NCBI RefSeq assembly: GCF_006345805.1
Contig: NC_043011.1
Location: 22,890,464-22,954,463, forward strand
Reading direction: 5' to 3'
From: Octopus sinensis
Taxonomy: Eukaryota
DNA: 64,000 bases
Part shown: piece by piece, positions 2,305 to 62,891 of the stretch
Numbering within the stretch: the stretch's first letter is position 1
Layout: each line of letters begins with the position of its first letter
Translations under genes and position numbers: made by a program
Notes under the pieces: generated by a model
Seen by the model: the letters and a program-made list of their open reading frames with translations, nothing else
Database searches by the model: none
What the model was told of the DNA's origin: nothing

Positions 2305-27764
<25,460 letters not shown>

Positions 27765-35777: not shown

Positions 35778-48143
<12,366 letters not shown>

Positions 48144-50763: not shown

Positions 50764-53700
50764 CAAACAAGTTAAAAATAGTTTTGGCTATGACATCTTG
50801 GTGGTGATGCACAATGCTCACCAATAAATGAAAGAGTTTTCTTAGTTGTGAATGCAATAAACCCAGATTCTGCTCTGGGCAATGCTGGTTCCCCAGCTTG
50901 GCAATTATGCCCCCTGTACACCATATTTTGCAAAGTAATAATAAAATAATAATAATGAAATTATTGTATATAGTGCTCAGGTGCACCACAACTTGTCAGA
51001 CAGTGCATATAAAGCACATGCAGTAAAGCGAACAATGCATGAGTCAGATACATGCTTGTGTGTGTATGGAGGGGAGAAAATCAGGTGTAGTGTTGGCGAA
51101 TCTCAGAAAGCATGGAAGTTTTGAAGGATGCAGTGCTCCGACAACTAACAACTGATGCCGGCAGTTTGTTCCATGCTTCAGCAACTCTCAACATGAAAAA
51201 ATGTTTCCTAAAATAGGTTGTTACCAGACCAGAAATACCTTGTGATGTAGTTTTTGTTTCAAGAGAACAAATACTCATCCTTCACCTGAACATCAACAAT
51301 ATAGCAACCAAAGCTGATCAATTATATACAATTAGAAACACTAGTTTTGGCATTCAGCTAAATGGTAAACTTATGTGCTGATTCTTTGATTTCAGTAGTA
51401 ACTTACATTAAAAGTTCTCTGCCATGTTATCTACTCAATTACTGAAAGGTGTTGGAGACACAAACTTGATAGTTTCATTTTTTCTTTCATCACACAGGTG
51501 TTGTACAAAACGAGGTATAATCCAATATACCTCTAAATTATTGTTATTCCAACTTTACAGAAACAGTTGTTGAGTTTAATAATAATGAACTTATTGTATA
51601 TTGCTCAGGTGCTCTACAATTTAAGATACATTGAATTTTGTGATTGGTCGACTCTATACATCAGGAACATTTTATTAAAACTTCAGCTGGGGCACTGCTT
51701 TGAAGGGGTTTAGTTGAATGAATTGACTCCAATACTTTTTTTTTTAAGCCTGGTACTTGTTCTATTCGTTTCTTATGCTAAACTGCTTAGCTACAGGGAC
51801 GTAAACAAACTAACACTGGTTGTCAAGCAATGTTGGTGATGAACACTGTACCTGGAACCATGTGGTTGGGAAGTAAATGTCTTATGACACCTACAATAGC
51901 TCTTTTACTCGTTTCAGTCATTTGACTCTGGCCATGCTGGAGCACCGCCTTTAGTTGAACAAATCGACCTCAGGACTTATTCTATCGGTCTCTTTTGCTG
52001 AATTGCTAAGTTACGGGGATGTAAACCGAACCCGACTCCTCATGATATGCCAAAGCATTCATTTTGAGTATATTTTGATTTTTAAAAGAGTGAAAAACAT
52101 CAGATAAACACCTCCACTTATGTGCTGGTAAGTCTCTAGTATAGTAAGACAACAGAATAACACTGTTAGTGGGAGAGGTTAGGAAGGTAAAGGACAAGGA
52201 TGAAATAATGGGATCATACTCTTACTATACTGTTTTATAACCATGTTGCCTGAAATACATCAGAACATTATCCTCATCAGCCCCCACCAGGACATGTATC
52301 TCCTGCATAGGGACTATTATAACCATGTTGATAAACGTAAAAGAACATTTTGGCAGGGTCAATTCCTAAAGATTTACAGTATTTCATCCTTCTTTTTACC
52401 TTACATTCTTATTGATTCCTTGTTTTTCTGGCAGAATGCTTATTGCTGCTGCTGCATGTTCTTATTCGATGGGGCTGGGGGGTCATCTCAGGTTAGTGGT
52501 CATTATGAGCAGAGCCAACCAAGTCCAACAGTGCTTTCCATTGCTGGTGGTCCCATGTCATCCCTTCTACACTCTCCAAAGTGACGTTATGCCTCTGGAG
52601 ATCTTCCTTAATCACACCCAGCCACGAGGCTTGTTCCAGCATTCAAAAACAACTTAGACCAAAAAATTGGAGTAGACTAGTGTTTTTTTTCTTCTTTTCT
52701 TTTTGTATTTCGCAAAAGACTTGCTCCCTTTTGTGAAATGTAATGATTCATCACACATCAAAGAGTGAGGAAATGAGATTTCTGACTCCTCTTGCTGTGC
52801 CACTGATGTGGATGGAAGCACTCCGTCGGTTACGACAATGAGGGTTCCGGTTGATCCGATCAACGGAACAGCCTGCTTGTGAAATTAACGTGTAAGTGGC
52901 TGAGCACTCCACAGACACGTGTACCCTTAACGTAGTTCTCAGGGATATTCAGCGTGACATAGAGAGTGACAAGGCCGGCCCTTTGAAATACAGGTACAAC
53001 AGAAACAGGAAGTAAGAGAGAGAAAGTTGTGGTGAAAGAGTACAGCAGGGATCACCACCATCCCTGCCGGAGCCTCGTGGAGCTTTAGGTGTTTTCGCTC
53101 AATAAACACTCACAACGCCCAGTCTGGGAATAGAAACCGCAATCCTACGACCGCGAGTCCACTGCCCTAACCACTGGGCCATTGTGCCTCCACGCCACTG
53201 ACGTATTACTCCAATCAAATGCAGTTTTATCCCGACTGGACTAATTATCCTGAGTTAAGGAACTGTTTACCTAGGTGGACAGAGGTTTTGAATGGTAAAT
53301 GTCCTCAATAGGAAAACAGAATCAGTGACAAGAGACAAGTAAATATGGACAGTCATCAATTAACCCACATGACAAAGGACCTCATTTACATCTTCAAATA
53401 TAATAGAAAGAAAAAAAACATAACAAAACAATTAAATCAAAAATTCTTTATTTCACTTTATCATGAAACAAAAATGTTTTTCATCTGATTATTTGTAAAA
53501 AAATATGTACTTACAATAAATAATCAGAAGAATATTCTGTACATACTGCTTTTAATTAATTCATATGAAATATATATATATATATATATATATAAATTTT
53601 ACTTCTCATATAAGCATATGCTTGTGAACATGCTCCATCCATTTCAGAAAGTGATTCTTCAATTAATACACTTCATGTGAAAATTCAGCCATTAAAATTC

Positions 53701-54685
53701 ATTTTTCTTCAGCTCAAAATATACCTTTCTTTTTTACCTCTACCATTATAACCATTAGGAGGGTGTGTATGTGTGTGTACATACAAACACACACACACAC
53801 ATTTACTCACATGCATACATAATACATATATGTGTATGTGTGTGTGTACAAACACACATTTACTCATATGTGCATACACACATTTACTCATATTTACACA
53901 CATATATACATACACTATATCAGGTTACATCACTCATAAGAAGCATAATACATATAACATACACATATATGGTCAGTCCACGAATCAAAATTGCAATCTA
54001 CAATCATGAGTCCAACACCTTAACCACTAAACTATGTGCCTCCACATACATATCTACAATAAATTAACAGCAAAGTTTTCATTATATATAATTCTTTATT
54101 GCCCACAAGCGGCTAAACATAGAGGGGACAAACAATGACAGACAAAGGGATTGAGTCGATTACATCGACCCCAGTGCGTAACTGGTACTTATTTAATCGA
54201 CCCCGAAAGGATGAAAGGCACAGTCAACCTCGGCAGAATTTGAACTCAGAACGTAGCGGCAGACGAAATACCACTAAGCATTTCGCCTGGCATGCTAACA
54301 ATTCTGCCAGCTCGTCACCTTAAGTTTTCATTATATAATGCAGTGTATAATTTATAACAAAAAGGGACAGAGACAGGAAAACAATGAACAAAAGAGTCAC
54401 TGAAGGGAACTCAAGCCACGTCTCTCATTCCTACTCAGTGATTGTGTCACTAATTGTATCACAAGTATTTCACTTGCTTCACAGATAATTTTTGTCAATC
54501 ACTTAAATTACTGGCAGTATATGTATGCTTGCTTCTGGCCATTCCGTTTACCTCATTACCTGAACAGGTGCTTGTTTTATACCCCATATATATATTAATA
54601 TATATATATATATATATGTATAAGATAAAACTTACTTGGAAATGGATGCGTGGCGTCAATCATATAATAATATAAATATATATAT

Positions 54686-54718
<33 letters not shown>

Positions 54719-55106
54719 GCATATATGGGTACAGGACATTACAAAACGTAAATAACATGAAATACAAGGCAAACGGGTATGCAAACGAGAGAAACAAATG
54801 GAAAAACAAGAAAAGTAACATAAAGAACGACCCTTCATCAGTTGTTGGCTGTTCATCTACTCCACATTTCAAGCAATCAACAACAATATGAGGCTTTGAA
54901 AAACAGTTGCTCCCATGAACCAAAATAAAATTTGGGATTTGTGGAGGGTCAAAGTTTGTATTATTTATTATTACAAATTTAGGATATTCACCAATAGATG
55001 AGCAACTCCTATTTCAGGATAACCTCATGGTATGGTATACGCAGTGAAAATTACATCAAATAAAATAAAATAACATACAATAAAATTAGTTAAGGTAATA
55101 CAAGTA

Positions 55107-55190
55107 ATCGCTACACGTGTTTCTGCACTGATGGGGTATGTATTAAGACTATACTTAATACATAAATACACCACTGCATCCTCAGGTTAT
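55107..55190 (-). ncRNA. Degenerate hammerhead motif (left arm of the 54966-56010 inverted repeat)
   Basis: CUGAGGA (55185-55179); 11-bp perfect distal stem II; GAAA CACGUG UA; weak stem I. Confidence 0.45.
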
Positions 55191-55787
55191 TAATATTATC
55201 ATTATGTGCGGGTAAAAGTTAAAATCTAATAAAATGTATACACCCTTAATTGCTATATTATTTGTAGAGTGAAGTGTATTGGTATATTATTTATAGAGTG
55301 AAAATAGATAACAAAACGTCCTTATTATGTACAACAGAGCTTATGAAAATACTCTAGTCGAGAGTTATTATTAAACAGTAATGAAGAGTGAGAAATAAAA
55401 TGCCAACATAAGAATATCTTTACATATAATAAAATGAAAAATATATCAAATACCCCCCCCCTATATCATCTCTACACACTTATGAGGGATAAAGTTACTA
55501 GAAGTTTTAATAATATTTATAGTAGTATTATATATGTATATACTAAGAACTAAGAATTTATTAAACAATATTACCTTTAAATGAATAGACAGGCCACATT
55601 TATGTAACATAAATCTCAAAACACTTTTGATATATTTCTAAGTTAATCATTAACAATTTTCTTAGGTAGAGCATTTTCAATATATATCTTAATTTTATTT
55701 TAGGTATCTAATATTTTTATAAATATATTTGTAATTTTTATTTTTAATATGATTTTAAACTTTTACCCATACATAATAATAATATAC

Positions 55788-55873
55788 ATAGCCTGAGGAC
55801 GCACTGGCATATTTATGCATTAAGTATAGCCTTAATACACCCCCCCCATCAGTGCAGAAACACGTGTAGCAAA
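55788..55873 (+). ncRNA. Degenerate hammerhead motif (right arm of the 54966-56010 inverted repeat)
   Basis: CUGAGGA 55793-55799; GCACUG/CAGUGC stem II; GAAA CACGUG UA; weak stem I. Confidence 0.45.
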
Positions 55874-56599
55874 TTTAATTAACTAATTTTATTGTATGTT
55901 ATTTTAATTATTCTATTTGATGTAATTTTCTCTGCATATACCATACCATTAGGTTATCCTGAAATAGGAGTTGCTTATCTATTGGTAAATATTCCAAATT
56001 TGTAATAATAATATTATAAAATATACTTTTTACATTTTATTAGAAAAGTGTAAAATAGTAAACTTCCTGATAACCTGGAATACTTGTTGTTCCCTAATAT
56101 ATTTTATTTATATTACTATATATATATATATTATAGTTATAAATAAGCAGGTGGTGTAAAGTTCCTGGCTTTGAGTAAAAGAAAATACAAGAAGATCAGT
56201 AAATTATGATTTTATTCAACATATTCCCCTCTCAGATTCACACACTTATTACAGTGGTCCTTCAGTTTTTCTAAAGCCCTGTAAAAGAACCTTTTCTGTT
56301 GGTGACAGGAAAGGCATCCAGCCACAGAAAATCTGCCTCAAAAATTACAGCTCATCCATGCAAGTATGGAAAGGTGACTTTTGTGACACCCTTAAAGCCA
56401 GGAAGATATGTGTGTATTTCATTAATTGTTTATAGTAACCACCCATGCTGTGAATACCAAAAGCAAAAGTCATATGATTTTCAAATTGGGTATATAGTGG
56501 GTTGGTGTGAGGGTGAAATTTGCTAGTGTGTAAGATTGCACAAAACATAAGGATTCTTCTTGTCACGGTCAATAAATAGAATGACTTTACAATTCGCCA

Positions 56600-56760
56600 G
56601 CAAAAGGAATCGACAGCATCTCATTCAGTTTAACCTGGGCCCTATGAACATGTTGTTCAACATGAGTGCAACCTGAGTAAAAATTCCACTGGAGACAATT
56701 TATGAACTCATTAGAACAATGCCCCAACGAATTAAATCATTAAAAACTGCATCAATGACA
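56600..56760 (+). mobile_element. Possible Tc1 transposase C-terminal remnant
   Basis: KIPLETIYELIRTMPQRIKSLKT resembles the Tc1 IP.ETI..L..SMP.R motif. Confidence 0.35.
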
Positions 56761-58277
56761 TTATTTTGTTTCTAGGAATAGATCTTTTAAAAGAGAATGG
56801 AGTCTATTTACTTTTGAGTTGTGTGTGTATGCATATATATGTACACCACCATCTCACACATATTACATTACATTACATTACATATATATATAAAGAGAGC
56901 AATTCAGCTTTAATAAACTGTATACACATATACAAAGAAAACGGAAGATTGACTGTAAGTACAATTTTCAAAGATTTCCAGAGTGAAAGATGATGTTAAT
57001 CAATTGAAAAGATGAGCAACCTAAAGAATTGATCTCTTTAATGTATGAAAAACATTTACTGGAAAAGGCACTTTTGTTAATTTAATATCTCTATTGAATA
57101 GATTTTGTTTTTTAAATTACTATAAGCACTAAACTGACTTTCTAGTGCTAGAAACTCTAACAAGTAGCTGATAGCACTAAGGTCAGTCACAGCTTTAAAA
57201 TAGCTGTTAGTTGTAGAACACATGGTAACCTGTATTCACTTTTCAGTTCCCTTAGCAGATGTTCAAAAGAACATGGTTGCTTAGTTGTTTTCAGTTAAAC
57301 GATGATGATGATGAAAGGAGTAAATTTTGTTAAGCACAAACTTATTGACAAGAGTTCTATTAATTCACACTATTAATTTCTAATACTCTCGCAAGCAGTC
57401 TTTGGACTGTGTCTTTAATTCACTGAGTTATAGGATTTACTTTTAGTTATACAATTCCAATGATATTCCCAAAAGCTGTTGCACTTTTCTTAACCAAAAC
57501 CAGAGTTGAAGCTGGAAGAGCATGAGAGGATAATGAGCAGAGTTCCTTCTCTTCACCTAGGACTTAGTTAAAAAAGAAAAAAATGTATTTACGCATATGT
57601 GCGCATACATTGTATGGTAAGAAATCTGCTTCCCAACCACGTGGTTCTGGGTTCAATTTCACTGCATGACACCTTGGGCAAGCGTCTTCTACTATAGCCT
57701 CAGATCAACCAAAACCTTATGTGTGGATTTGGTAGATGGAAACTGAAAGAAGCTTACCATTTGTATGTGTGTCTTTGTATCTGTGTTTGTTCCCCACCAC
57801 CGATTGATAACTGGTGTTGGTTTGTTTACATCGCTGTAACTTTGTGGTTCAATAAAAGGGATCGACGGAATAAATACCAGGCTTTAAAAAAAATAAAATT
57901 TCAAGGCGGTGTCCCAGCATGGCTGCTGTGTAACGATTGAAACGAGTAAAAAGTAAAAGATACTATACACAAGGACTAAAATAGGTTTTGTAGAAATATA
58001 TGTTTTTTTTATTACAAATTTTGTAATTTTATAAACATTATGAAATATTACAAATGTAGAAAAATAATTTGAATGTTTAAAACAGTGGTAGAACAGGTTA
58101 GGCAGAGAACGGTATAGTAGAAGAGAGAAAAGATTGAGAATAAAATAAAAAAGAAAAAACTAATATTTGAGATGAAATTATTAGCAAAAGAATACACACA
58201 CACACACACACATATATATATATTATAATATAAGTAAATAAATGGAGTTGAACGCAGATGTTATTAAAATTCTTTTA

Positions 58278-58359
58278 CTTTCGACATATGTTTCGAAGAC
58301 AACATGGTATTATTCCAAAAGAATAAATGGTGTAAAATGCAATCTTCTCATCAGGAAAG
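58278..58359 (-). ncRNA. Type I hammerhead ribozyme motif with palindromic stem III (intact)
   Basis: Stem I CUUUC/GAAAG; core CUGAUGA; stem II GAAGA...UCUUC; GAAA; CAUAUG; UC. Predicted cleavage between 58283 and 58282. Activity untested. Confidence 0.8.
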
Positions 58360-58386
58360 AAAGAGAGCTTATCTCAACAACAAGAC

Positions 58387-58470
58387 ATTCTCCTGATGAG
58401 AAGATTGCATTTTATACCGTTTATTCCTTCGGAATAATACCATGTTGTCTTCGAAACATATGTCGAAAGT
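58387..58470 (+). ncRNA. Type I hammerhead ribozyme motif, inverted partner copy
   Basis: CUGAUGA 58393-58399; stem II GAAGA/UCUUC; GAAA 58453-58456; CAUAUG; UC at 58463-58464. Stem I AUUCUC/GAAAGU has one mismatch. Confidence 0.72.
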
Positions 58471-58859
58471 AAAAGAATTTTAATAACATCTGCGTTCAAC
58501 TCCATTTATTTACTTATAATACACAAATTACTGCACATTAACCCGGAGTTTCTACCTTTGAATAGGTCGCTTCAATCCGTGTTACTTGTGTGAATTTGCT
58601 ACCTGGTAACTGTTTATTGAATTTCCATGTTAACAGTAAACAAAGGATAATTCATTCATCCATTTAAATATATTATAATATATTATATATATATATTATA
58701 ATAGAATATATTATAAATATATATATATTATATATTATAATAATATATATATATTATAATATATATATATATTTATATATATATAATTATAATATATATA
58801 TATTTTTATAATATATATATATACACACACATGCAACACACTGACAGTGGGGGAAAGGA

Positions 58860-59635
58860 TTAAAAAATTTGCTTTAAGAAAACTATGAAGGCGAGGAGTA
58901 ACAAAGTGTATGTATTATAGAGAGTGGAAGAAGCAGCAGAACATATTTTTTCATTCGAACTGAAATTCTCAAGAATGTCTTGGTATGTATGAGGTATGAA
59001 TTTCTGTGGCTCAGAAATATATGAAAGCCCAATTGCACTCTCCTTGAAAAGAAGATTTTTACCACCACTGGATGAGAATAAAAGATCCTTGGTTTCACTG
59101 GATCCCAAATCCAAGTAACTGAATACACTGTACATACGCTTTGCCACTTGGTCGTCATTGAAAACCATTGCATGTGCAGGAACTTTGGCAAGATGACATG
59201 TGAGCCAGTTTTGAACTGACTCACGTGAGCCGTCGCTACATAAAAGTTCGTAATCTTCTGATTTTAGATCTTTTTCCCACTCTTCTTTTCCTTTACCATC
59301 AGTGCTTTCCAAAACTGTGGTGTGTTTCACAAATGCCACCTCACCAGTATCCTCAGCTAGACATCGGAAAGCACCTGTATAGCCATAGTATTTGTTCTTC
59401 TTGCTTGCAGAACATTCCTTGCCATTATCTGGGCAAAGCGCACACAAAGATGCAGGGTTACCATGATTTGGATTATTTTTTGCGTCTAAAGCTCCAGGAA
59501 CGCAACTTTTAGAGAAATATGCTCCAACATTTTTAACAATATTATCATTTTTAATCTCATTCTTTTCAATTAACAAACCAACCGGCACCTTCCATCCTGA
59601 TGTTTTACCATAACCAGTGTGACATGATTTGGCAC
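58860..59635 (-). CDS. MELTF: Melanotransferrin-like last exon (GAKSCHTG...FLKQIF*)
   Basis: Acceptor ctcatttag| at 59636; extends track ORF 58860-59588. Confidence 0.92.
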
Positions 59636-60846
59636 CTAAATGAGAGAAAGAGGTGGGGGAAAAAATTATTTAAAAATAAAACTAAAAAAAATTTAAATAA
59701 CAGTAGTCAAAATAATGAATATGCTAACTAACACACACTGAATTGATTTACTGTAAATGGATACTGTTTCTAACAGTAATGAATAATTAAAATGGACCAA
59801 ATGTAACAAAAATAAATTTTTGTTTTTTAGATTCAGAGTGGCTATGTGGTAAGTAGCTTGCTAACTGCTAACCAACCACATGGTTCCGGGTTCAGTCCCA
59901 CTGCGTGGCATCTTGGGCAAGTGTCTCCTGCTATAGCCCCGGGCCGACCAATGCCTTGTGATTGGATTTGGTAGACGGAAACTGAAAGAAGCCTGTCGTA
60001 TATATGTATATATATATATTTATATAGGTGTGGTGGTATGTTTGTGTGTCTGTGTTTGTCCCCCTAGCATTGCTTGACAACCGATGCTGGTGTGTTTACG
60101 TCCCCATCACTTGAAACTGAAAGAAGCCTGTCTTATATATATATATATTTTTATATAGGTGGGTGGTGTATGTTTGTGTGTGTCTGTGTTTGTCCCCCTA
60201 GCATTGCTTGACAACCGATGCTGGTGTGTTTACGTCCCCATCACTTAGCGGTTCGGCAAAAAGAGACCGATAGAATAAGTACTGGGCTTACAAAGAATAA
60301 GTTCCGGGGTCGATTTACTCGACTAAAGGCGGTGCTCCAGCATGGCCGCAGTCAAATGACTGAAACAAGTAAAAGAGTAAAAAGAGTAACCAATAAGGAA
60401 AAACAGATCTATCAATTTACATGTAAGTAAATATCTGAACAGCCTGAATTCTGACTCCCACAATGCACTGGTTCACATAGGCACATCGTTAAGGTTTATA
60501 CTTTCTTTATGTAGTGGTGTATCTAAGATAAGCTAGCCCATTGCTCTCAAAGCTGTATCAATGATAGGATTTCAACTCAATTCACGTACAGCAAAACGTT
60601 TATCAATTATACAGTAGTATTACTGTTTGAGGAAGTACATCCAAATAAAGATCTTCTATGGAATTGTTCAACATAGGCGCAGGAGTGGCTGTGTGGTAAG
60701 TAGCTTGCTAACCAACCACATGGTTCCGGGTTCAGTCCCACTGCGTGGCATCTTGGGCAAGTGTCTTCTGCTATAGCCCCGGGCCGACCAATGCCTTGTG
60801 AGTGGATTTGGTAGACGGAAACTGAAAGAAGCCTGTCGTATATATG

Positions 60847-60879
<33 letters not shown>

Positions 60880-61721
60880 ATGTGTGTGTATGTGTGTGTG
60901 TGTGTGTGTGTTTGTGTTTGTCCCCCTAGCATTGCTTGACAACCGATGCTGGTGTGTTTACGTCCCCGTCACTAAGCAGTTCGGCAAAAAGAGACCGATA
61001 GAATAAGTACTGGACTTACAAAGAATAAGTCCTGGGGTCAATTTGCTCGACTAAAGGCGGTGCTCCAGCATAGCCGCAGTCAAATGACTGAAACAAGTAA
61101 AAGAGTATACTTGCAATAGCAGCCAATTGTCCCCCATATGACATCTTACTAGAGTAGTTCCTAACCTTTTTTCCAACCAAAAAAACTCTTTCAATTAAAC
61201 AATTTTACCCATAGGGCACCCAGGTTTTTAAGGGACCCAATTTTATTAACTAACAACAAATATACTATTTCCAGGTCCATTTCTCACTTGAAAGTAACTA
61301 TCTAACTGAATAATTATATATTTTGTATTGTATTCATTTCAGATTTTGAACGAAACTCATGAACTTCCAAGGGTGCTTAGACCTTAGATTAGGAACCATT
61401 CTGTTGCCAGCTTAAAGAAAGAAAGACAATGGCGTATCTGATATTGCTCATATTATCATCATCATTCATTTAATATCCACCATTCCATGCTTGCATCAAA
61501 AAGGTGAAGATGCATCACGTTCAATTAAATAATAAGTAATAAATTATATATATATATATGTATGTATATATATATCTTTTATATATATATATATATGTAT
61601 ACATATATGTGTGTGTGTATATATATATATATTTGTGTGTGTATATATATATATATATATGTGTATATATGTATGTATATATCTTTTTATATATATATAT
61701 ATGTGTATACATATATATATA

Positions 61722-61765
<44 letters not shown>

Positions 61766-61991
61766 GTGTATATATATGTGTGTGTTATATATATATATTG
61801 TTGTGTGTGTGTATATATATATATTTTGTGTGTGTATATATATATATTTTGTGTGTGTATATATATATATATGTGTGTGTTATATATAGATTATATTGTG
61901 TATATATATATATATATATTATATATATATATATATTTGTATATATATATATGTATATATATATATGTATATATGTATATATATATATTTA

Positions 61992-62043
<52 letters not shown>

Positions 62044-62060
62044 ATATATATATGTATATA

Positions 62061-62093
<33 letters not shown>

Positions 62094-62108
62094 ATATATA
62101 TATATATG

Positions 62109-62154
<46 letters not shown>

Positions 62155-62891
62155 ATATATACAATGTATATATATATATAAGCAATAAAATCTCTGAGCA
62201 AGATGTAAAAAGTAGCAGCACAACATCATGAAGTATATTTGCCACCTAAATATGGTTGACCCATATGGGATGATGCTACTTTTGTTTATAGCCACAGGAA
62301 TATATCTCCTCCAAGTGGCTAACAACATACTGTCTGTGTCTGATCAGTATTTGCTTGATCTATCCTTACAAAAATCTATTTAACCCATAGATGGGACCCT
62401 GACAGGTACTACCATTCCCGGTCAGAATAGACCTGAAAGTAATGATAATTAAGGGGTGACCACATACTCCCCACAACTCCAGAAGTCCCAAACTTGAGCC
62501 TTGCCACCAGATGCAGTTTAATGTCATACCCAAGACATTCATACATATATACAACAGGCTTTCATCTAGTTTACATCTACCAATTTCCACTCACAAGGCA
62601 CAGCTCAGTTTGAACACATAGTAGAAGATGCCCATGATGTGCCGTGCTAAGACACCTGGAAAAATGTGGTGGCAAAGTGAACTTAACCACACAGCAATGC
62701 ACATGTGAATAAACCAGAAATAAATAGAAAAGCAAGAGGTCCATTTCAAATATAAATGGTATGACAAACCTTTCAAATTAGGAAACTTCAATTTGGAGTC
62801 TTTCTTTACCACAGCCACGGCATAGTAGGAGGCTTCCTGAGCATTCTTTTCTGTTATATGAGTTTCAGATATTCCAGGTGTAATTTTACAT
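58860..62891 (-). CDS. MELTF: Melanotransferrin-like (transferrin family, C-terminal lobe plus GPI signal), 3' part only: complement(join(58860-59635,62770-62891)); upstream exons lie outside the window
   Basis: Transferrin motifs [58 protein letters not shown]-terminus CSAASS followed by a hydrophobic tail, typical of a GPI signal. The symbol is by family resemblance; orthology was not tested. Confidence 0.88.
61540..62180. repeat. (TA)n/(TG)n microsatellite in the melanotransferrin-like intron
   Basis: Direct reading. Confidence 0.97.
62770..62891 (-). CDS. MELTF: Melanotransferrin-like penultimate exon ([11 protein letters not shown]...[20 protein letters not shown])
   Basis: Polypyrimidine tract plus AG at 62892, donor G|gtttgt at 62769; joins in phase to the last exon. 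Confidence 0.88.

What the first reader, a model, noticed from the sequence alone, without database searches (positions are those of the whole stretch)
58229..58518. Head-to-head pair of intact hammerhead ribozymes forming a 128-bp hairpin just downstream of the melanotransferrin stop codon
Seen: each arm of a 97%-identical inverted repeat encodes a complete type I hammerhead, CUGAUGA - stem II (GAAGA/UCUUC plus a distal hairpin) - GAAA - CAUAUG - UC. The minus-strand copy has a perfect 5-bp stem I (CUUUC/GAAAG) and is sense to the melanotransferrin transcript, about 500 nt past the stop. All 4 arm differences cluster in the distal stem II; none touch the core. Established: hammerheads whose stem III is a short palindrome (here ACAUAUGU) are typical of Penelope-like element termini and cleave as dimers. 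Inference: in either transcription direction the antisense arm is made first, so the ribozyme would be locked in long dsRNA, which is also an ADAR substrate in a lineage with extensive A-to-I editing. Editing or arm skipping could unlock cleavage. A minus-strand AATAAA at 58613-58618 lies upstream of the hairpin. The unit could therefore be a 3' UTR switch or a post-polyA cleavage/termination element rather than a simple fossil.
Basis: partly seen in the sequence, partly recalled or inferred. Interest (0 to 1): 0.88.

Follow-up and report, generated by a model that had tools for sequence, protein, structure and literature searches.

The report
Inverted hammerhead retroelement fragments, octopus gene flank
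Two truncated copies of a hammerhead-ribozyme-bearing retrotransposon tail sit head-to-head in a TA microsatellite 340 bases past an octopus melanotransferrin stop codon; they are absent from the same site in Octopus bimaculoides, so this looks like an ordinary lineage-specific transposon footprint and not a conserved regulatory device.

Summary
Arms 58226-58356 and 58391-521 form a 131-nt inverted repeat (126/131 matches), and each carries CUGAUGA, a long stem II, GAAA, CAUAUG and UC. Only the minus-strand copy (58390->58226, 165 nt) is a complete type I hammerhead. The plus copy is cut off 2 nt before its core, and its "stem I" is fortuitous. Rfam Hammerhead_1 matches at 18.8 bits (gathering score 34) and only in a narrow search. 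In O. bimaculoides the orthologous site is an uninterrupted (TG)n(TA)n microsatellite. O. vulgaris has the identical hairpin. A single-arm, core-decayed copy elsewhere in O. bimaculoides runs through the "spacer", so the family unit is one arm and not the palindrome. Both O. bimaculoides copies lie within 1 kb of Penelope-like (RT plus GIY-YIG type) ORF fragments. 5' truncation, an adjacent inverted copy and a TA-microsatellite target are the published Penelope-like insertion signature. Published in vitro work shows the element's protein cleaving and extending both DNA strands. Best reading: a neutral, post-speciation retroelement footprint. A 3' UTR switch is not supported: there is no conservation, only one sense ribozyme per transcript so no tandem dimer can form, and a -200 kcal/mol competing hairpin. 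Transcription and cleavage could not be tested here. Interest is low.

The parts
58226..58390 (-). Minus-strand (gene-sense) copy. It is the 165-nt 3'-terminal fragment of the repeat family, 5'-truncated at the junction with the other copy. It includes the 34-nt 'spacer'.
   Evidence: The O. bimaculoides solo copy L002 6105-6271 aligns across 58389-58226, so the spacer belongs to this copy.
58277..58360 (-). Complete type I hammerhead motif. Stem I is CUUUC/GAAAG. The core is CUGAUGA. Stem II has a GAAGA/UCUUC base plus a roughly 43-nt distal hairpin. Then come GAAA, stem III (A-U and C-G pairs with an AUAU loop; palindrome ACAUAUGU) and the UC cleavage dinucleotide. The predicted cut is at 58283|58282.
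   Evidence: Sequence. RF00163 at 18.8 bits, E=0.019, below the gathering score of 34. The constrained hammerhead fold is -10.3 kcal/mol against an MFE of -12.5. The homodimer with an 8-bp stem III is -32.4.
58391..58521 (+). Plus-strand copy, 131 nt, truncated 2 nt upstream of the CUGAUGA box (core at 58393-58399). It has the core and stems II and III but no native stem I 5' strand.
   Evidence: Inverted-repeat boundary, alignment of the copies, and a C.A mismatch in the substitute stem I.
58519..58665 (.). An unrelated repeat of about 145 bp. It is also part of the DNA missing at the O. bimaculoides empty site. It contains the minus-strand AATAAA at 58613-58618.
   Evidence: A 73% copy sits at L001 473-648 in a different context. 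It is absent from L002 at the orthologous site.
58196..58230 (.). (CA)n(TA)n microsatellite flanking the insertion on the left. It forms part of the target microsatellite.
   Evidence: Three-way alignment with the O. bimaculoides empty site. A 19-nt direct repeat occurs at 58212-58230 and 58685-58703, but it is low-complexity.
58661..58832 (.). TA-rich microsatellite, expanded relative to O. bimaculoides, ending in (CA)n. It flanks the insertion on the right.
58860..59669 (-). Last coding exon of the melanotransferrin-like gene, with stop codon TAA at 58860-58862.
   Evidence: PF00405, E=6e-57. The C-terminus is identical to O. vulgaris CAI9736201.1.
58008..58013 (-). AATAAA downstream of the insertion, conserved in O. 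bimaculoides. It is a candidate ancestral poly(A) signal (inference only).
   Evidence: The conserved 'TTTGTAATAAAAAAA' appears in the O. bimaculoides sequence and in the window sequence.

Best explanation
The hairpin is a transposon footprint. Two 5'-truncated copies of the 3' end of a hammerhead-bearing retroelement lie head-to-head in a (TA)n microsatellite, about 340 nt downstream of the melanotransferrin-like stop codon. The element is most likely a Penelope-like element (PLE) or a non-autonomous relative mobilised by one. The insertion happened in the O. vulgaris lineage after its split from O. bimaculoides.

Inferred mechanism: the PLE endonuclease cut both strands of the AT-rich target, and each 3' end primed reverse transcription of the element's 3' region. 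The two cDNAs stopped early, at 165 nt and 131 nt, and were joined at 58390/58391. That gives a palindrome whose 'loop' is simply the extra 34 nt of the longer copy.

The hammerhead belongs to the life cycle of the source element, presumably processing of tandem or precursor transcripts as a dimer. At this locus it is most likely inert. Only one arm is a complete ribozyme. There is no second sense copy with which to dimerise. If the region is transcribed, the roughly 130-bp duplex would dominate folding.

Shown: anatomy, empty site, solo copy, truncation point, energetics. Inferred: the PLE assignment, the dual-strand priming event, and neutrality.
For: - **Empty site.** O. bimaculoides L002 has a continuous (TG)n(TA)n(TGTA)n microsatellite where the window and O. 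vulgaris L001 carry about 530 extra bp.
- **Shared insertion.** The hairpin is identical in O. vulgaris, including all arm differences. The two genomes differ by 17/6139 substitutions, so 0.8 substitutions are expected in the hairpin and 0 are seen, which is no signal of constraint.
- **Family unit is a single arm.** The solo copy L002 6061-6271 (81% identity) runs through the 'spacer', ends at the same 3' terminus and abuts a (GTAT)n microsatellite. Its core has decayed (CGUGAUGA; stem II 5' strand deleted). A second diverged copy, L007 6569-6760, keeps CGAAACATATGTCG but has CUGGUGA.
- **Link to PLE ORFs.** Both O. bimaculoides copies lie near PLE-type ORF fragments: L002 5369-5772(-), about 290-330 bp from the copy's 5' end (6061 or 6105, depending on the family profile used) and head-to-head with it; and L007 4870-5627(+), with the hammerhead about 950 bp downstream on the same strand. 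Full-length homologues have an RT-like region, a Cys-rich linker and a weak GIY-YIG match (PF01541 E=3.6e-4; RVT_1 E=1.6e-4).
- **Literature.** PLE insertions are highly 5'-truncated, often have an adjacent inverted 5'-truncated copy, and favour (TA)n microsatellites that obscure target-site duplications (PMC8557442). PLE terminal repeats carry hammerheads with short palindromic helix III that act as dimers with low activity, and paired hammerheads on opposite strands 100-700 bp apart were noted in S. mansoni (PMC4209133). Purified PLE protein cleaves and extends both DNA strands and prefers AT-rich DNA (PMC11167929).
- **Age.** Arm divergence of 4/131 against about 10-12% flank divergence from O. 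bimaculoides places the insertion after the species split.
Against: - No copy was found in which this hammerhead is contiguous with an intact PLE ORF. A near-full-length PLE in O. sinensis (L009 5467-7911) has no hammerhead of this family or any CUGANGA...GAAA motif nearby.
- Only four family copies could be examined. No cephalopod genome could be searched as a whole.
- No clean target-site duplication or 30-40-bp PLE 'tail' is discernible.
- The unrelated 145-bp repeat inside the same extra DNA is unexplained.
- The four arm differences cluster within 16 nt, which is unexpected if both arms were copied from one template and then drifted.
- Transcription, editing and cleavage were not testable, so a lineage-specific function is not excluded.
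Confidence: 0.78

Rival explanations
1. Exapted 3' UTR device. The gene-sense hammerhead is held inactive in a long duplex, and A-to-I editing or alternative folding releases it. It would then cleave the melanotransferrin transcript, acting as a switch or as a post-poly(A) termination element.
For: - The gene-sense arm is the complete hammerhead, with a perfect 5-bp stem I.
- The hairpin lies between the stop codon and a conserved AATAAA at 58008, so it could be within the 3' UTR.
- An annotated O. vulgaris isoform splices to an exon 6.5 kb downstream, which implies transcription through the region.
- The arm differences avoid the core.
Against: - The hairpin is absent from the orthologous O. 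bimaculoides site.
- There is no excess conservation between the window and O. vulgaris.
- Other family copies decay freely.
- The hairpin, at -200 kcal/mol, dwarfs the ribozyme fold.
- The short stem III class cleaves poorly even as dimers (PMC4209133), and only one sense copy exists per transcript.
- Three AATAAA/ATTAAA hexamers lie in the inserted DNA upstream of the ribozyme, so many transcripts might end before it.
Confidence: 0.04
2. One retroelement fragment inserted first, and a later DNA-level event made the palindrome. The event would be fold-back replication or repair at the microsatellite, producing an inverted duplication, and not dual-strand priming by the element's enzyme.
For: - The short asymmetric spacer (34 nt, belonging to one copy) is what fold-back priming produces.
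- Microsatellite flanks are fragile.
- Both arms end at the same outer position.
Against: - Adjacent inverted copies are a documented regular feature of PLE insertions (PMC8557442).
- The PLE enzyme extends both strands in vitro (PMC11167929).
- An inverted PLE fragment also faces the solo copy in L002.
- The present data cannot truly separate the two routes.
Confidence: 0.12
3. The element is a foldback or MITE-type DNA transposon whose terminal inverted repeats happen to contain a hammerhead-like motif.
For: - Long inverted arms with a short loop.
- TA-rich flanks that could hide a TA or TTATAA duplication.
- A 19-nt direct repeat nearby.
Against: - The other family copies (L002, L007) are single arms with no inverted partner within reach.
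- The L002 copy extends through the 'loop' and further 5'.
- The two arms have different lengths by descent.
- The direct repeat is microsatellite sequence.
Confidence: 0.04

Closest known systems
Hammerhead ribozymes in the terminal repeats (pLTRs) of Penelope-like elements (Cervera & de la Pena 2014, PMC4209133; Lunse, Weinberg & Breaker 2017, cited in PMC6765202)
   Same: - Type I topology with a short palindromic helix III, implying dimeric action.
- A large helix II and a short helix I (4-5 bp).
- Location near the element's end.
- Thousands of dispersed, mostly truncated copies per genome.
- Pairs on opposite strands have been noted.
- AT-rich or microsatellite targets and inverted 5'-truncated partner copies.
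   Different: - Helix III here is 2 bp plus a 4-nt loop, like 'canonical' invertebrate type I motifs, and is not missing.
[quoted passage not shown]
- Helix II is unusually long (53 nt).
- Contiguity with an RT-EN ORF was not shown.
Metazoan non-LTR retrozymes (Cervera & de la Pena 2020, PMC7229834; Li et al. 2026 preprint 10.64898/2026.07.22.740005)
   Same: - Type I hammerheads with a weak palindromic helix III in AT-rich, short non-coding repeats.
- Proposed to be non-autonomous derivatives of PLE pLTRs.
   Different: Retrozymes are defined by tandem head-to-tail repeats of 170-400 bp that yield circular RNAs. All four copies seen here are solitary or inverted, and none is tandem.
Hammerheads embedded in host mRNAs or introns: the discontinuous 3' UTR hammerhead of rodent Clec2 genes (Martick et al. 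2008, from my own knowledge) and the amniote intronic HH9/HH10 (cited in PMC7229834)
   Same: A hammerhead in sense orientation within or next to a protein-coding transcript.
   Different: Those motifs are conserved across species and have a stable helix III or active fold. This one is absent from a congeneric species and is embedded in a far more stable hairpin.
Inverted-repeat transposon pairs in 3' UTRs as ADAR substrates (for example inverted Alu pairs; general knowledge)
   Same: A duplex of about 130 bp formed by two inverted retroelement copies in a possible UTR would be a generic editing or dsRNA-sensing substrate.
   Different: No RNA data here. Nothing about this is specific to the ribozyme.

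Membership tests
Hammerhead ribozyme, type I (Rfam RF00163) | Conserved core: CUGANGA, GAAA, and a U-H cleavage dinucleotide with the G10.1-C11.1 and A15.1-U16.1 pairs | tested here: met
   Both arms read CUGAUGA-G...C-GAAA-C-AUAU-G-UC. All core columns align in the Rfam match.
Hammerhead ribozyme, type I (Rfam RF00163) | Three helices, with helix I open | tested here: met
   Minus copy: helix I is 5 bp, helix II is 6 bp plus an extension, and helix III is 2 bp plus a tetraloop. The constrained fold is within 2.2 kcal/mol of the MFE. Plus copy: the helix I 5' strand is not native and pairs 4/5.
Hammerhead ribozyme, type I (Rfam RF00163) | Score at or above the curated gathering threshold | tested here: not met
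   18.8 bits against 34. No hit in the whole-window search or the 551-nt search. The 49-nt stem II insert and AU-rich stems cost score.
Hammerhead ribozyme, type I (Rfam RF00163) | Site-specific self-cleavage | not testable with these tools
   Needs in vitro transcription and cleavage assays.
Penelope-like element (terminal fragment) | 5'-truncated copies, often with an adjacent inverted 5'-truncated copy | tested here: met
   Copies of 165 nt and 131 nt are joined head-to-head at 58390/58391. The solo copies extend further 5'. Feature as described in PMC8557442.
Penelope-like element (terminal fragment) | Insertion into AT-rich or microsatellite DNA | tested here: met
   The empty site is (TG)n(TA)n(TGTA)n. 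The L002 copy abuts (GTAT)n and the L007 copy follows (TG)n.
Penelope-like element (terminal fragment) | Hammerhead located in the terminal repeat of an element encoding RT plus GIY-YIG endonuclease | tested here: inconclusive
   Both O. bimaculoides copies lie within about 0.3-1 kb of PLE-type ORF fragments. Their homologues show weak RVT_1 and GIY-YIG matches. No contiguous intact element was found, and the L009 PLE lacks the motif.
Penelope-like element (terminal fragment) | Optional 30-40-bp 'tail' and target-site duplication | tested here: inconclusive
   No tail is recognisable. The 19-nt direct repeat lies in low-complexity TA sequence.
Non-LTR retrozyme | Head-to-tail tandem repeats of 170-400 bp, each with a type I hammerhead | tested here: not met
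   No direct or tandem copy occurs in the window or loci. The only partner is inverted.
Foldback / MITE DNA transposon | The mobile unit is bounded by terminal inverted repeats, with a constant target-site duplication | tested here: not met
   Other family members are single arms (L002, L007).
Conserved host-gene hammerhead (Clec2-type 3' UTR; HH9/HH10-type) | Orthologous conservation across species | tested here: not met
   Absent at the O. bimaculoides orthologous site.

The most novel reading that the evidence does not exclude
In the O. vulgaris lineage, the newly inserted inverted pair has been co-opted. The melanotransferrin 3' UTR, or the retained intron of the long isoform, would carry a 130-bp duplex that is hyper-edited by ADAR. 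Editing-dependent loosening would then let the gene-sense hammerhead cleave, coupling RNA editing to transcript stability or 3'-end formation.
Probability: 0.03. Interest if true: 0.65.

Novelty: new member of a known kind. Interest (0 to 1): 0.17.

Why it matters
The main value is as a calibration case. A textbook-looking ribozyme pair next to a gene turns out to be a young transposon footprint once the orthologous empty site is seen.

It adds an octopus example to the known association of type I hammerheads with Penelope-like retroelements. It also illustrates the head-to-head architecture that dual-strand priming by the PLE enzyme would produce.

If the region is transcribed, it would be one more inverted-repeat dsRNA in a lineage with heavy A-to-I editing. 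That property is generic to inverted transposon pairs and does not depend on the ribozyme.

Tried and rejected
- **Rfam.** At gathering threshold on the whole window there were no hits. In E-value mode on 551 nt there were only spurious hairpin-driven matches such as mir-1179 and psbA 3' UTR. Both searches are uninformative because the palindrome and the stem II insert defeat the filters.
- **Exact-pattern scans.** A search for GAAACATATGTCGRAAGTAAAAGAA in JGI metagenome contigs and IMG/VR gave 0 hits. These collections hold no cephalopod DNA.
- **Protein-space proxy.** Searching with the 76-aa ORF that spans the hairpin, to find other copies, gave no hits.
- **O. vulgaris isoform P0077.** It is not on record as a gene product. 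The longer isoform P0196 worked.
- **Other loci.** The Logan contig of a related octopod (L003/L004) has only 91 nt after the stop, too short to show the 3' UTR. The Argonauta hians locus L005 has no family copy in 31 kb, which is too small a sample to conclude anything.
- **Pfam on the L002 RT-like ORF fragments.** Nothing significant. Homologues had to be collected first.
- **RNAalifold on the four copies.** No hammerhead consensus emerged, because two copies are near-identical and two have decayed.
- **Bacterial promoter/terminator scan.** Irrelevant for this eukaryotic locus.
- **Assembly artefact.** Considered and rejected. The same palindrome, with the same four arm differences, is present in an independent O. 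vulgaris assembly.
Full report
**1. What is in the sequence**

The region 58226-58521 is an inverted repeat. The arms are 58226-58356 and 58391-58521, each 131 nt, 96% complementary and separated by 34 nt. There are five mismatches. Four are transitions at arm positions 25, 29, 37 and 40, and one lies at the outer edge.

Read 5'->3', each arm contains CUGAUGA, then GAAGA...UCUUC enclosing a roughly 43-nt distal hairpin, then GAAA, CAUAUG, and UC followed by GAAAG. The 22-mer TCTTCGAAACATATGTCGAAAG occurs exactly twice in the window, once per strand, against zero expected.

The gene claim is right:
- 58863-59669(-) is a transferrin-domain exon (PF00405, E=6e-57).
- Its translation ends in a hydrophobic tail and TAA at 58860-58862.
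- It has the same C-terminus as O. vulgaris 'melanotransferrin-like' CAI9736201.1.

The hairpin begins 339 nt after the stop. The predicted cleavage site of the gene-sense ribozyme (58283|58282) is 577 nt after it. The minus-strand AATAAA at 58613-58618 exists.

**2. Are these hammerheads?**

Rfam gives nothing at gathering threshold over the whole window. It gives no hammerhead even at E<=10 when 551 nt are searched, because the palindrome attracts hairpin families instead.

Restricting the search to the minus arm (103 nt) returns RF00163 Hammerhead_1 over the full model. Every core column matches, at 18.8 bits (gathering score 34) and E=0.019. The penalty comes from a 49-nt insertion in stem II.

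ViennaRNA results:
- The isolated minus arm forms stem I and the long stem II in its centroid structure.
- The enforced hammerhead fold (-10.3 kcal/mol) is close to the MFE (-12.5 kcal/mol).
- Two copies cofold into the classical double hammerhead, with an 8-bp ACAUAUGU stem III (-32.4 kcal/mol).
- The complete hairpin folds at -200 kcal/mol in either transcription direction.

So the motif is a bona fide type I hammerhead by sequence and architecture, though sub-threshold for Rfam. Activity is untested.

One correction to the finding. The plus copy starts only 2 nt upstream of CUGAUGA (inverted-repeat boundary 58391, core 58393-58399). Its apparent stem I strand, 'UUCUC', is the reverse complement of the minus copy's own 5' extension. 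It pairs 4 of 5 with a C.A mismatch. By descent, only the minus (gene-sense) copy is a whole ribozyme.

**3. Comparative evidence**

Using the transferrin exon I retrieved the orthologous loci of O. vulgaris (L001, OX597831.1) and O. bimaculoides (L002, CM046618.1).

- *O. vulgaris.* The window is collinear with O. vulgaris over 53974-60112, with 17 substitutions in 6139 nt (0.28%). The two are therefore the same species complex. The hairpin is identical, including the four arm differences. With 0.8 substitutions expected, zero observed is not evidence of constraint.
- *O. bimaculoides.* The flanks align at 88-90%. About 530 bp are missing, and the site is a continuous (TG)n(TA)n(TGTA)n microsatellite.

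The extra DNA consists of three parts: a TA-rich expansion, an unrelated repeat of about 145 bp (58519-58665, with a 73% copy at L001 473-648), and the hairpin.

Arm divergence (4/131) against about 10-12% flank divergence between species dates the event well after the species split.

**4. The repeat family**

One more copy lies 30 kb away in O. bimaculoides (L002 6061-6271, 81% identity):
- It is a single arm.
- It aligns through the window's 'spacer' (58357-58389) and beyond.
- It ends at the same ...CCATTTAT terminus, directly followed by (GTAT)n.
- It has lost the ribozyme (CGUGAUGA; the stem II 5' strand is deleted).

The unit of the family is therefore one arm, and the window's minus copy is a 165-nt 5'-truncated fragment.

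An ORF fragment 290-330 bp from the 5' end of that solo copy (depending on whether the copy is taken to start at 6061 or 6105), on the opposite strand (L002 5369-5772), has 775 relatives in the representative library. Full-length relatives show an RT-like block (FDVTMGS...GLYRDDGL...FLDV.LDL), a CxC-rich linker and a C-terminal 'VYKA...YVGST...FKERY..H' block. That last block gives sub-threshold GIY-YIG matches (PF01541 E=3.6e-4 and 3.6e-3). One relative gives RVT_1 at E=1.6e-4. This is the RT-linker-GIY-YIG layout of EN+ Penelope-like elements.

Fetching one such O. bimaculoides ORF (L007) revealed a second diverged hammerhead copy about 950 bp downstream on the same strand (6569-6760). It has an invariant CGAAACATATGTCG, a core mutated to CUGGUGA, and a preceding (TG)n.

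By my rough estimate, two out of two solo copies lying next to fragments of a sparse PLE family is unlikely by chance (order 10^-3 to 10^-4). However, a near-complete PLE in O. sinensis (L009) carries no such motif. The link is therefore circumstantial.

**5. Fit to the literature**

- PLE insertions show strong 5' truncation, frequent adjacent inverted 5'-truncated copies forming inverted repeats, and a bias to (TA)n microsatellites that hides target-site duplications (PMC8557442).
- PLE terminal repeats carry type I hammerheads with short or absent palindromic helix III, large helix II and short helix I. These have low activity even as dimers. Paired motifs on opposite strands 100-700 bp apart were noted in Schistosoma (PMC4209133; review PMC6765202).
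- Purified Poseidon PLE protein cleaves and extends both strands of an AT-rich target (PMC11167929). This gives a direct route to two head-to-head cDNAs.
- Tandem 'non-LTR retrozymes' with similar ribozymes are argued to derive from PLE pLTRs (PMC7229834; 2026 preprint).
- Hammerhead_1 hits are already reported by the hundred in a cephalopod genome (PMC6962438).

**6. Mechanism and function**

Most likely (0.78) this is a neutral footprint of one complex retrotransposition event into a microsatellite.

The ribozyme served the source element. At this locus it has no sense partner for the dimer that short-stem-III hammerheads are thought to need. It is also opposed by a duplex some 190 kcal/mol more stable.

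An annotated O. vulgaris isoform that splices to an exon 6.5 kb downstream implies read-through transcription, in which the hairpin would be intronic. A conserved AATAAA at 58008 would place the hairpin in a long 3' UTR.

Against that, there is no conservation. The AATAAA at 58613 is itself part of the insertion. Three poly(A)-type hexamers precede the sense ribozyme within the inserted DNA.

The clustering of the four arm differences in distal stem II is statistically mild. It is equally expected if the two cDNAs came from slightly different source RNAs whose variable region is the dispensable tip of stem II. That last point is inference only.

**7. Verdict**

This is a new member of a known kind, and interest is low.

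Noticed in passing
window 58519-58665: A repeat of about 145 bp, unrelated to the hammerhead arms, is part of the DNA absent from the O. bimaculoides empty site. A 73% copy lies at L001 473-648 in a different context. Whether it arrived in the same event as the hairpin is unknown.
   Followed up: partly
L001 36570-36625 (O. vulgaris); window junction near 52024/52025: The O. vulgaris isoform CAI9736200.1 uses an alternative last exon (…ADYTSNKFIYKTKIAEYE*) 6.5 kb downstream of the hairpin. That exon lies in a stretch of about 600 bp with no counterpart in the window, so the isoform cannot exist in the window's genome as annotated.
   Followed up: partly
L002 5369-5772(-) and L007 4870-5627(+) (O. 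bimaculoides); L009 5467-7911 (O. sinensis): Penelope-like ORF fragments of a family with hundreds of relatives. These relatives escape Pfam RVT_1 and GIY-YIG at curated thresholds, showing only weak hits and HTH_animal PF26215. Two of the fragments sit next to hammerhead copies.
   Followed up: partly
L002 6327 onward and 2690-4250: Assembly gaps (runs of N) flank the O. bimaculoides solo hammerhead copy and the PLE fragment. This fits the reported difficulty of assembling PLE tandem/inverted structures.
   Followed up: no
window 3760-5527(-) and 43911-44633(+): Open reading frames of non-LTR (LINE-type) retrotransposons. RVT_1 scores E=5e-13, with a weak PHD-like match, at 4373-5035.
   Followed up: no
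window 57611-57957, 59836-60112, 60113-60380, 60674-61107 and others: Many copies of a SINE-like repeat of about 250-430 bp. It is also abundant in L001, L002 and even the Argonauta locus, and it surrounds the melanotransferrin exons.
   Followed up: no
window 58212-58230 and 58685-58703: An exact 19-nt direct repeat, ATATATATATATTATAATA, brackets the hairpin plus the 145-bp repeat. It could be a target-site duplication but lies in TA microsatellite sequence.
   Followed up: partly
window 61526-62181 and 2450-3350: Very long (TA)n/(TATG)n-type microsatellite tracts, one of them inside an intron of the melanotransferrin-like gene.
   Followed up: no
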